A stretch of DNA of 63,667 nucleotides, counting the filler, from Reticulomyxa filosa (taxonomy: Eukaryota; Protista; Foraminifera), in NCBI GenBank assembly GCA_000512085.1. It is 25 parts of 25 records of this genome, joined end to end, with 100 filler letters (N's around TTAATTAATTAA, not from the genome) between each part and the next. Parts side by side here need not be neighbours in the genome. Positions count along the whole stretch, not along the records: positions 32,995 to 37,262 come from ASPP01026367.1; 24 more parts are not named here. One strand, written 5' to 3'. The number at the start of each line of letters is the position of its first letter. The first letter of the stretch is position 1. Shown here piece by piece: positions 33,086 through 37,362 of this stretch. A program made the position numbers and the translations under genes. Below the pieces are notes generated by a model. It worked only from the letters and a program-made list of their open reading frames with translations, was not told the origin of the DNA and made no database searches.

Positions 33086-35809
33086 AATCCTTACGCAGCT
33101 TGTGGTCCGAAAACGGGCAATTCGTACTGTTCAGCGAAGGGAGGTTGTATTGAAACGTCGTACTCTTGCTCCGACAACTTTGCGTCGGATCGTTATGCTT
33201 GTGAGGTGGGTGATTGGAGTGGTAAGTACGGCACTTTGTTTTTGAACAGTACTAACATATTGTCGGCCGTGGTCAGTTCGTTTGGAGATATCACCGGCGA
33301 TCAATTAGCTGCCAAGTCAGTCGTCTTCCATTGCGCCAACAACGGGGCCGCTGCTTTCTGTGCCCCTTTTCTTCCCGCATCGGGTAGTGTTTCGTCTGTC
33401 ACTTCTCGTCGCCAACCAAGTTATTATTATTTTTTTTTTTTAAAAAAAAAAAAAAAAAAGACAAAATACATTTTTGAAAAAAAAATGTATAAATAAATGA
33501 AAAAGACGGATACTCTTTGAAAGCTGACTTTTCAAGTGCACCTGGCATGACCCCTAAAAAGAATGCGTACATATCATTTGAGTTTTGTAACATATATACA
33601 TATACATAATACACGCATATACGTATACAAATGTATATTTATGTATACGTATTTTATGATTACATATATACACGAACAATGAACGTATATGATATATGAT
33701 ATATCAGTTACACTGGACGAGTGAACTACCAATTCCAATCAAACGCACTGCAAGGAACAAGTCCATGCGCGAGCGGACTGGCGGAGGTATGGATCGGCGA
33801 CGCGTGGACGAAAGGTACGAGCGTGGCGGAGTCGGGACTGTGCACATCATCATTGTACGGAACATTCTACGACCCGACAAAGCAATGTTACGCGAGTAAG
33901 AACACAACGGACTGTGCGTCGTGCACGGCAGGGAAGCTGTGCGATGACAGCGGATACACGTACAGTTGCGACTACGCGAGCAACCCATTTTCGTGTTCGC
34001 CGATGGATTTCACAGGGAGATACGGCTATGTGAATCTGACGCGCATATCACGCAAAGGACAGAGTTCAACAGTGTATGACCGATACTTGGGCGACTTAGA
34101 TTTGCTAGTGCATAAATCAGTGGTGTTAATATGCTCGGATTCGAAGCAGCCATTGCTTTGCGCGAAAATCCAAAACGTCGGCATTGGCGTTGCCACGGCG
34201 TCATTTTCGGCATCGAATAGTGGTGCGTCGGGACAAGTGATGGTTCGAGACGGCCAGGTGGACGTGCAGATGGTGTTTGCCGTGGCCAAGGCAATCTATG
34301 CCAATGGCTCGGTATTGCCGACCAATTGCTTTGATCAAGGCTTGAAAGTGCACATTCACGAGAAGTGGACATACGACGACACCACAGATCGCGTAGGCGC
34401 CAGCGCGTGTGATAAAGCGCACACGGGAGGACATTGGGACCCTTGGATCGCATGCAGCTCCACCACCGGAAATACGGCCGTATGCAAATTGTCGTCCGCA
34501 CCCACTTCCAGTCCCACATCTGCTTGTGTCAGTCTCGGCGGCAGTGCTGGCAATGGCAAGTACGTGTGCAACTCCACAGACTATCTTCTCGATCCCTTTG
34601 CATGCGAGGTCGGCGATTGGAGTGGCAAGTATGGAGTGTACCCCGTCGAGGGCAACAGCTCGCAAGTCAGACGCACCGATCAGTCGTATTTGGAAGTTGA
34701 CGCCACCGAGTTGGTCGGACGCTCCGTCGTCTTTCATTGCGCGACCGACAACTCCAGAGCATTTTGCGCTCCTTTCGTCCTCCAGGATGGACTCACCGAT
34801 GGAGACGACACCGAACCCACCTGGTCTTTGAATAATCAGGCCGGAAATCTCATTCATAATGCCACCGTCAGCGCTTCGTGGGGTACCGTTGCTTTGTATA
34901 GCACTGGGCTTTACTATGTCAATATCAATGACAGCACTTCTACTTGTTCTTCCGATGATACTATTGCTTATGGAGTCTTTCAAGGTTTTCTTTTATATAT
35001 ATGTATATATAATAGATATATGTATATATACATACATATATCTATTTATATACATACATATATCTATTATATACATACATATATTATTAGATTCATCCTG
35101 CACGAAAATGTATGATCCTACAATTCAATGCGTCCCCAAAAGTGAATACAACGACGGTTGGTGCACTGGTGATATGACGTGCGATGTTGCCAGCGCCTAT
35201 GACTGCCAATTCAGCTCCTCGCCCTACTCGTGCTCACCGTCGGACTTGTCTGGAAAGTATGGGTCCACTGGCACTGACAAAACAATTGCCGTGAAGGGAT
35301 GGGATGACTTGATGGTTCCTTTGGCACATTTGCGAACAAGATACTTTGGTACGTATTGCTCCAGCTCATTGACTACCACACATTGCCAGTCTTGGGACGT
35401 CTCCGTGCAACCCACACCAAGTCCAACCACCAGTCCAACCAAAAGACCCACTTCGCATCCGAGCACTCCACCAACCAAAAGACCAACCAAACATCCAACT
35501 AAACATCCAAGCAAATTACCAAGCTTCCCACCAACACTGGCGCCATCTCTGTCACCTACAACTCCAGGTCCAACTGGAAATCCTTCGCAATTCCCAAGTC
35601 CTCAACCAACAGTGTATCCCAGTGTTCCAACAACTCCTCCTTCTTTGCGTCCTTCTCTTGCTCCATCGATCCCTCCCACTCAAAGTCCAAGTGTGCCCCC
35701 TTCTCGGCATCCTACCCCTATTCCAACTTCTCCCCAAGCAAGCTCGGCTCAAACAATCACTACTCTTATTTGTGGTTTATTTGCACTGATCTCGTTGTTG
35801 TGGATTTAA
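33086..35809 (+). CDS. Cell-surface protein with at least four tandem Cu-only SOD-like domains, a Pro/Thr/Ser stalk and a GPI-like hydrophobic C-terminus (5'-truncated)
   Basis: Domain 3 has VHIHE, TGGHWDP, CEVGDWSGKYG, LVGRSVVFHC and SRAFCA. Homologous CEVGDWSGKYG, CSPMDFTGRYG and CSPSDLSGKYG blocks mark three more repeats. The protein ends TLICGLFALISLLWI*. Introns at about 33421-33505, 33580-33707 and 34985-35090. Confidence 0.85.
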
Positions 35810-37024: not shown

Positions 37025-37165
37025 TTATTTGTGATAGTAATAAGTGGTGCTAACACCAGCCAAATGTTCCCAACTTCCAGGGATATTAAAAGCAAATGAA
37101 ATTCTGGTGTCTGTGCCATATACAGGTTGAACATGATGGCGCATATACCCAGGAAACAATAGCTT
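37025..37165 (-). CDS. 2OG-Fe(II) oxygenase (TIGR02466-like) last exon
   Basis: LLFPGYMRHHVQPVYGTDTRISFAFN carries the distal His and the R-x-S 2OG-binding motif. Confidence 0.75.
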   Translation of the reverse strand, partial: KLLFPGYMRHHVQPVYGTDTRISFAFNIPGSWEHLAGVSTTYYYHK

Positions 37166-37362
37166 TTTCAAACACAATGTTAACAAGGAAAGAGCAACAC
37201 ACATATATGTACACAGCAGTATAAGTGTGTCCTTGCACACGTGTGATTGAAAAAAAAAAAAANNNNNNNNNNNNNNNNNNNNNNNNNNNNNNNNNNNNNN
37301 NNNNNNTTAATTAATTAANNNNNNNNNNNNNNNNNNNNNNNNNNNNNNNNNNNNNNNNNNNN

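What the first reader, a model, noticed from the sequence alone, without database searches (positions are those of the whole stretch)
33086..35809. Surface protein with tandem Cu-only SOD domains alternating ligand-bearing and ligand-less copies
Seen: at least four SOD-fold repeats, a Pro/Thr stalk and a hydrophobic C-terminus. Repeat 3 has all four Cu-ligand His (HIH 34351-34359, GGH 34432, VFH 34735), the CEVGD Glu/Asp pair and the catalytic-position Arg (34756), and lacks the two Zn-only His. Repeat 1 keeps CEVGD and VFH but has Ala at the Arg position (its HxH region lies outside the segment). Repeats 2 and 4 lack the His ligands (VWIGD, YGVFQ, VVLIC) but keep the Cys scaffold. Known: single-domain Cu-only SODs (fungal SOD5 type) and animal four-domain Cu-only SOD repeat proteins exist. 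Inference: an (active + pseudo) pair duplicated in a protist, forming an extracellular superoxide- or copper-handling system with built-in pseudo-heterodimers, possibly of independent origin.
Basis: partly seen in the sequence, partly recalled or inferred. Interest (0 to 1): 0.85.

Follow-up and report, generated by a model that had tools for sequence, protein, structure and literature searches.

The report
Foraminiferal paired copper-only SOD surface protein
This foraminiferan gene encodes a cell-surface protein of four superoxide-dismutase-like domains in which copper-site copies alternate with metal-free copies, a pairing found in dozens of related proteins and in a lineage where copper-only dismutases had not been reported in the papers I could search.

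Summary
Real. A3 has the full SOD5-type set (four His, Glu/Asp, Arg, short loop VII, no Zn His). A1 lacks the Arg, as in R. filosa. B2/B4 lack all His, Glu and Arg. The A-B pair is an old unit: 57 homologues end in it, 100/118 A domains keep the catalytic set, 73/77 B domains keep no His. A profile of A hits only C. albicans SOD5 in the PDB (E 1.7e-12); an A-B homologue models as two packed SOD barrels (pLDDT 94.5, pTM 0.90), not with SOD1-dimer geometry. The domain is the Cys-rich type also found in oomycetes, ichthyosporeans and Paulinella, so it is not an independent invention, and it does not nest in animal CSRPs in the best tree. Cu-less repeats are already known in CSRPs; the fixed alternating pair and the rhizarian host are new. 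Pfam misses it. Activity is inferred, not shown.

The parts
33086..33419 (+). Exon a: C-terminal half of domain A1 (Cys-rich loop, CEVGD, VFH; Ala at the catalytic Arg place) and A-B linker. 5' exons with signal peptide, HxH and GGH lie outside the piece.
   Evidence: 73% identical to R. filosa A1
33506..33581 (+).
   Evidence: same exon in R. filosa contigs L001/L002
33708..34984 (+). Exon c: rest of B2, all of A3, first half of B4
33709..34176 (+). Domain B2 (main part): SOD fold, no Cu His, no Glu, no Arg; Cys scaffold and Asp kept
   Evidence: B-HMM 95 bits vs A-HMM 59
34183..34782 (+). Domain A3: complete Cu-only SOD site (His 34351, 34357, 34432, 34735; Glu 34606, Asp 34615; Arg 34756), 6-residue loop VII, Cys-rich insert
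   Evidence: A-HMM 204 bits
34840..34984 (+). Domain B4, N-terminal part (His-less YGVF strand)
   Evidence: 56% identical to intronless orthologue P0148
35091..35398 (+). Exon d start: domain B4, C-terminal part, with a shortened disulfide loop
   Evidence: B-HMM 72 bits; P0148 reads through the same junction
35408..35734 (+). Pro/Thr/Ser mucin-like stalk, 109 aa
   Evidence: (PF04886 below cut-off)
35735..35809 (+). GPI-signal-like end (small residues, spacer, hydrophobic tail, stop)
   Evidence: pattern only, no GPI predictor run; 35 of 57 homologues end the same way

Best explanation
A GPI-anchored extracellular Cu-only superoxide dismutase of a Reticulomyxa-like foraminiferan, made of two A-B modules on a mucin-like stalk. 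Shown: gene structure, residues, homology, predicted fold. Inferred from SOD5: the protein is exported without metal, A3 picks up Cu outside the cell through its open site and turns superoxide into H2O2 and O2 at the cell or reticulopod surface. Inferred: each B domain is a metal-free, disulfide-braced partner packed against its A domain, serving folding, stability or binding rather than catalysis. Inferred: A1 still binds Cu (four His and Glu/Asp in the R. filosa orthologue) but, without the Arg, is a poor dismutase, so the protein has one strong catalytic site, one Cu-holding site and two scaffolds.
For: A profile hits only SOD5 in the PDB, E 1.7e-12; model of homologue P0061 matches SOD5 at Z 14.7, B half a SOD-like fold at Z 9.3; 100 of 118 A domains keep His-His-His-Glu-Asp-His-Arg, loop VII 4-8 residues; 73 of 77 B domains have no His at any Cu site while ten Cys and the Asp are 90-100% conserved; A and B are homologous, 99.9% but form separate clades even without ligand columns; one clade for this gene's repeats is rejected, p 1e-4; pTM 0.90 for the pair; 49 of 57 A-B proteins have a GPI-like or TM end. 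SOD5-type enzymes and an oyster CSRP are active SODs (PMC13017621, PMC12217663).
Against: No activity or Cu binding measured; I found no assay of any Cys-rich member. The 40-55 residue Cys-rich loop could cover the site. The confident model is of a homologue (41% identical), not of the window protein (single-sequence model failed, pLDDT 33). No reads could be laid, so expression of this gene is unshown. The signal peptide is seen only in the orthologue. The role of B is a guess from conservation and predicted packing.
Confidence: 0.7

Rival explanations
1. A surface copper sink or copper-supply protein: A domains hold Cu taken from sediment water, dismutation is secondary.
For: A1 keeps the Cu ligands but lost the Arg in two species, and six or so other homologues show the same His-intact, Arg-less state. 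Cu-only SODs load Cu outside the cell (PMC13017621).
Against: Arg is kept in 107 of 118 A domains, which points to selection on superoxide chemistry; B domains carry no alternative metal ligands.
Confidence: 0.13
2. A binding or adhesion scaffold (like oyster dominin or Cu-less arthropod CSRPs): B domains recognise prey, matrix or test material and the A site is accessory.
For: B is conserved as its own clade with specific invariant surface-type residues; mucin-like stalk; some members have TM and cytosolic tails; precedent in PMC13017621.
Against: B was not found without a preceding A in any protein that looks complete at its start; the catalytic set of A is under strong conservation.
Confidence: 0.1
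3. B is a built-in CCS-like partner that docks on A through the SOD1 dimer face and helps Cu loading or disulfide formation.
For: B is a His-less SOD fold tied to an intact one and predicted to pack on it; CCS domain II is the known precedent.
Against: The model does not superpose on a linked SOD1 dimer: 6dtk aligns at rmsd about 19 A over both halves and by one domain only in VIA. B has no Atx1 domain or CxC. SOD5-type enzymes need no chaperone (PMC13017621).
Confidence: 0.07

Closest known systems
Candida albicans SOD5 (fungal Cu-only SOD; PDB 4n3t)
   Same: Fold (Z 14.7), four Cu His, E110/D113 pair, no Zn His, short loop VII, Arg, canonical disulfide, GPI-type anchor.
   Different: Single domain; lacks the Cys-rich loop and the extra Cys (A domains have a median of 9 Cys); no His-less partner.
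Oomycete Cu-only SODs (e.g. Phytophthora sojae PHYSODRAFT_508297) and ichthyosporean relatives
   Same: Same Cys-rich loop between bridging His and Glu/Asp motif; profile E about 1e-30; nearest Atlas model.
   Different: One domain or A-A tandems with all sites intact; no B domain found in them; Lys for Val in the Glu/Asp motif in oomycetes.
Animal and Capsaspora CSRP (Cu-only SOD repeat proteins)
   Same: Tandem Cu-only SOD domains, GPI or secreted, mix of intact and Cu-less repeats.
   Different: 4-12 repeats with the Cu-less ones N-terminal (PMC13017621), no Cys-rich loop, separate from the foraminiferal domains in the best tree; here strict A-B alternation with a dedicated B clade.
SOD1-CCS heterodimer / CCS domain II
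   Same: Catalytically dead SOD fold paired with a live one.
   Different: Intracellular, two chains, Zn site kept, canonical dimer face; not matched by the A-B model.

Membership tests
Eukaryotic Cu-only SOD domain (SOD5 type) | Greek-key SOD beta-barrel | tested here: met
   Model of homologue P0061: A half SOD5 Z 14.7, B half 1s4i Z 9.3; window repeats tied to it by HMM
Eukaryotic Cu-only SOD domain (SOD5 type) | Four Cu-ligand His | tested here: met
   Repeat 3; repeat 1 only in the R. filosa orthologue; absent in repeats 2 and 4
Eukaryotic Cu-only SOD domain (SOD5 type) | E110/D113 pair and loss of the two Zn-only His | tested here: met
   CEVGD aligns to SOD5 HEVGD; no His in the Zn loop of repeat 3 or of 81/118 A domains
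Eukaryotic Cu-only SOD domain (SOD5 type) | Short electrostatic loop VII with catalytic Arg | tested here: met
   6 residues His-to-Arg in repeat 3, 4-8 in the family; Arg missing in repeat 1
Eukaryotic Cu-only SOD domain (SOD5 type) | Extracellular, GPI-anchored or secreted | tested here: inconclusive
   GPI-like tail by pattern; signal peptide only in orthologue and homologues; no predictor available
Eukaryotic Cu-only SOD domain (SOD5 type) | Cu-dependent, Zn-independent SOD activity | not testable with these tools
   needs assay
Fungal/oomycete single-domain Cu-only SOD proteins | One domain of about 25 kDa | tested here: not met
   four domains
CSRP | 4-12 tandem Cu-only SOD-like domains | tested here: met
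   four
CSRP | Descent from the animal/Capsaspora CSRP lineage | tested here: inconclusive
   Best trees keep them apart (89/85; SH-aLRT 94); window repeats alone with CSRP rejected, p 1e-7; all foraminiferal domains as sister to CSRP not rejected, p 0.11
CSRP | Cu-less repeats at the N-terminus, 5-9 residue linkers, no Cys-rich loop | tested here: not met
   Cu-less repeats are 2 and 4; A-to-B linker clearly longer than the B-to-A one; Cys-rich loop present
SOD1/CCS-type heterodimer | Canonical SOD1 dimer interface | tested here: not met
   Predicted pair does not superpose on linked SOD1 dimer 6dtk; a model, not a structure

The most novel reading that the evidence does not exclude
Foraminifera evolved, separately from animal CSRPs, an obligate two-domain enzyme in which a dedicated metal-free SOD fold packs on a Cu-only SOD through a new interface and controls or stabilises it; and the Cys-rich Cu-only SOD behind it is an old, eukaryote-wide extracellular enzyme class (Rhizaria, stramenopiles, Holozoa, perhaps Amoebozoa) that Pfam misses, which would overturn the view that Cu-only SODs arose in opisthokonts.
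Probability: 0.45. Interest if true: 0.72.

Novelty: new variant of a known kind. Interest (0 to 1): 0.58.

Why it matters
A February 2026 review by the group that defined these enzymes (PMC13017621) calls Cu-only SODs and CSRPs opisthokont-specific, with oomycetes as the only exception. Here a large, unannotated family sits in foraminifera, with relatives in Paulinella and ichthyosporeans, and only 6 of 118 domains get any Sod_Cu match. It gives a candidate enzyme for handling superoxide at the surface of sediment protists that live among peroxide and metal redox chemistry (Nonionella and Bolivina carry members; high SOD expression is reported in PMC11736642), and a minimal two-domain system for asking what Cu-less repeats do, a question left open for the much larger CSRPs.

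Tried and rejected
Pfam on the three large exons: no SOD match. Single-sequence fold of repeat 3: failed, pLDDT 33. The spliced model was searched exon by exon; the joined protein was not searched or folded. Peterson 2016, Robinett 2018 and Gleason 2014 were not held, so their surveys could not be checked for protist members. The 101-row mixture-model tree did not finish its careful search; a 60-row LG+G4 tree was used for tests. Rejected: separate genes or chimeric assembly (same exons in R. filosa; intronless A-B-A-B homologues; orthologue across intron 3); pseudogene decay of B (conserved Cys, own clade); Cu/Zn SOD or mycobacterial-type Cu-only SOD (no Zn His, short loop VII); thrombospondin hit (E 0.14, Cys/Trp bias); window being R. 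filosa itself (67-74% DNA identity to its gene).

Full report
Gene and host. The piece has GC-rich coding blocks between AT-rich introns. The best homologue is Reticulomyxa filosa RFI_29532 (53% identity over the whole large exon, E 2e-143). Its contig overlaps the contig of RFI_02775 at 96.8% over 442 nt, so these are one split gene, and it has the same introns as the window. The window model is exon a 33086-33419, b 33506-33581, c 33708-34984, d 35091-35809; all introns are GT..AG and the frame closes, 801 codons plus stop. DNA identity to R. filosa is 67-74%, so the host is a related foraminiferan (inference). In R. filosa an intron falls right after the GGHY motif of repeat 1; the window starts inside that intron, so signal peptide, HxH and GGH are outside the piece. 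The R. filosa gene begins with a signal-like peptide directly before repeat 1, which suggests exactly four domains. An intronless contig of an orthologue, P0148, reads through the intron 3 junction as predicted and ends in the same stalk and tail. Two intronless contigs encode full A-B-A-B proteins of 765 and 803 aa.

Residues. Repeat 3 has four His, Glu/Asp, the Arg six residues after the last His, and no His in the Zn loop. Repeat 1 has Ala at the Arg place, and its R. filosa orthologue has all four His, Glu and Asp but Pro there. Repeats 2 and 4 lack all four His, the Glu and the Arg, and keep the Asp.

Family. Searches gave 57 proteins ending in an A-B pair (a few are near-identical or partial). 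Named ones come from R. filosa, MMETSP0190, Nonionella stella and Bolivina argentea; most are environmental, and I call them foraminiferal because they cluster with these. Of 118 A domains 100 keep the whole catalytic set; of 77 B domains 73 have no His at any Cu site, while ten Cys and the Asp are nearly invariant. No B was seen at the start of a complete-looking protein. A Ser-x-x-Glu motif marks A domains followed by B (Glu in 46 of 48) and not A-A tandems (0 of 22), but this is confounded with ancestry. 35 of 57 end in a GPI-like tail, 14 in a TM helix with tail.

Fold. Pfam finds no SOD in the window and only 6 of 118 A domains match Sod_Cu at E up to 0.1. The A profile hits only C. albicans SOD5 in the PDB (E 1.7e-12); the B profile's best hit is also SOD5, weakly; A and B align at 99.9%; the Atlas feature search puts both repeats with Sod_Cu clusters. 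An A-B homologue, P0061 (41% identical to the window's A3 plus start of B4), models at pLDDT 94.5 and pTM 0.90 with the same strand pattern in both halves. Its A half matches SOD5 (Z 14.7, rmsd 2.9 over 134) and its B half a Bacillus SOD-like protein (Z 9.3). The high pTM implies a defined packing, but it does not match a linked SOD1 dimer. I could not inspect coordinates.

Origin. The A profile finds many single-domain oomycete proteins at E about 1e-30 and ichthyosporean ones (Sphaeroforma, Creolimax; Amoebidium), a two-domain Paulinella protein and a Stereomyxa protein (a culture transcriptome, contamination not excluded). These share the Cys-rich loop that fungal SOD5 and CSRPs lack. In trees the foraminiferal A domains (with repeats 1 and 3) and B domains (with 2 and 4) form separate groups, also with ligand columns removed (94/93 and 96/82). 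One clade for this gene's repeats is rejected (p 1e-4), so the A/B split is older than the gene; nesting them alone with CSRP is rejected (p 1e-7); all foraminiferal domains as sister to CSRP is not rejected (p 0.11). Sisterhood of 1+3, 2+4, and A+B is unresolved. The root was set on fungi plus CSRP, not inferred.

Mechanism. By analogy with SOD5 as reviewed in PMC13017621, A3 is probably exported apo, loads Cu outside and dismutates superoxide at the surface. From my own knowledge of SOD1 Arg143 mutants, loss of this Arg cuts activity about tenfold or more, so A1 is probably a Cu-binding, weakly active domain. B is probably a structural partner. None of this was assayed.

Novelty. PMC13017621 restricts Cu-only SODs to fungi and oomycetes and CSRPs to animals and Capsaspora, and already notes Cu-less repeats in CSRPs. 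Searches for foraminiferal or rhizarian Cu-only SODs found no report, but the library is partial and three key papers were not held. Verdict: a real, undescribed variant of a known enzyme class; interest 0.58.

Limits. The joined spliced protein was left out of all searches.

Noticed in passing
window 37025-37190, minus strand: 3' end of a convergent gene: last exon of a putative 2OG-Fe(II) oxygenase (PF13759, E 5.7e-6, 27.1 bits); the rest lies beyond the piece.
   Followed up: partly
L001 (R. filosa ASPP01025645) and L002 (ASPP01002674): RFI_29532 and RFI_02775 are two mis-annotated pieces of one gene; L001 also has a frame break in B2 near 900-950 that the annotation skips, probably an assembly error.
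   Followed up: partly
P0214, P0216, P0228, P0246 (Phytophthora): Cys-rich Cu-only SOD proteins named 'ATP-dependent DNA helicase Q4' in NCBI; a mis-annotation.
   Followed up: no
P0111 (Logan, 1109 aa), P0103 (JGI, 711 aa): Repeat proteins with seven and four SOD-like domains without the Cys-rich loop, of unknown host; CSRP-like, possibly non-animal.
   Followed up: no
P0058 (Periconia digitata): A fungal protein with two tandem intact Cu-only SOD domains and a GPI-like end, although fungal Cu-only SODs are described as single-domain.
   Followed up: no
P0072, P0074, P0078, P0083, P0018: A-type domains that have lost His ligands separately from the B clade, so ligand loss recurs in the family.
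   Followed up: no
P0065, P0073, P0090, P0067, P0131: Longer relatives (three A domains, or A-B fused to several hundred further residues) whose extra parts were not examined.
   Followed up: no
window 35091-35120 and P0059 B4: The last B domain has a shortened disulfide loop in both the window gene and the distantly related A-B-A-B protein P0059.
   Followed up: partly
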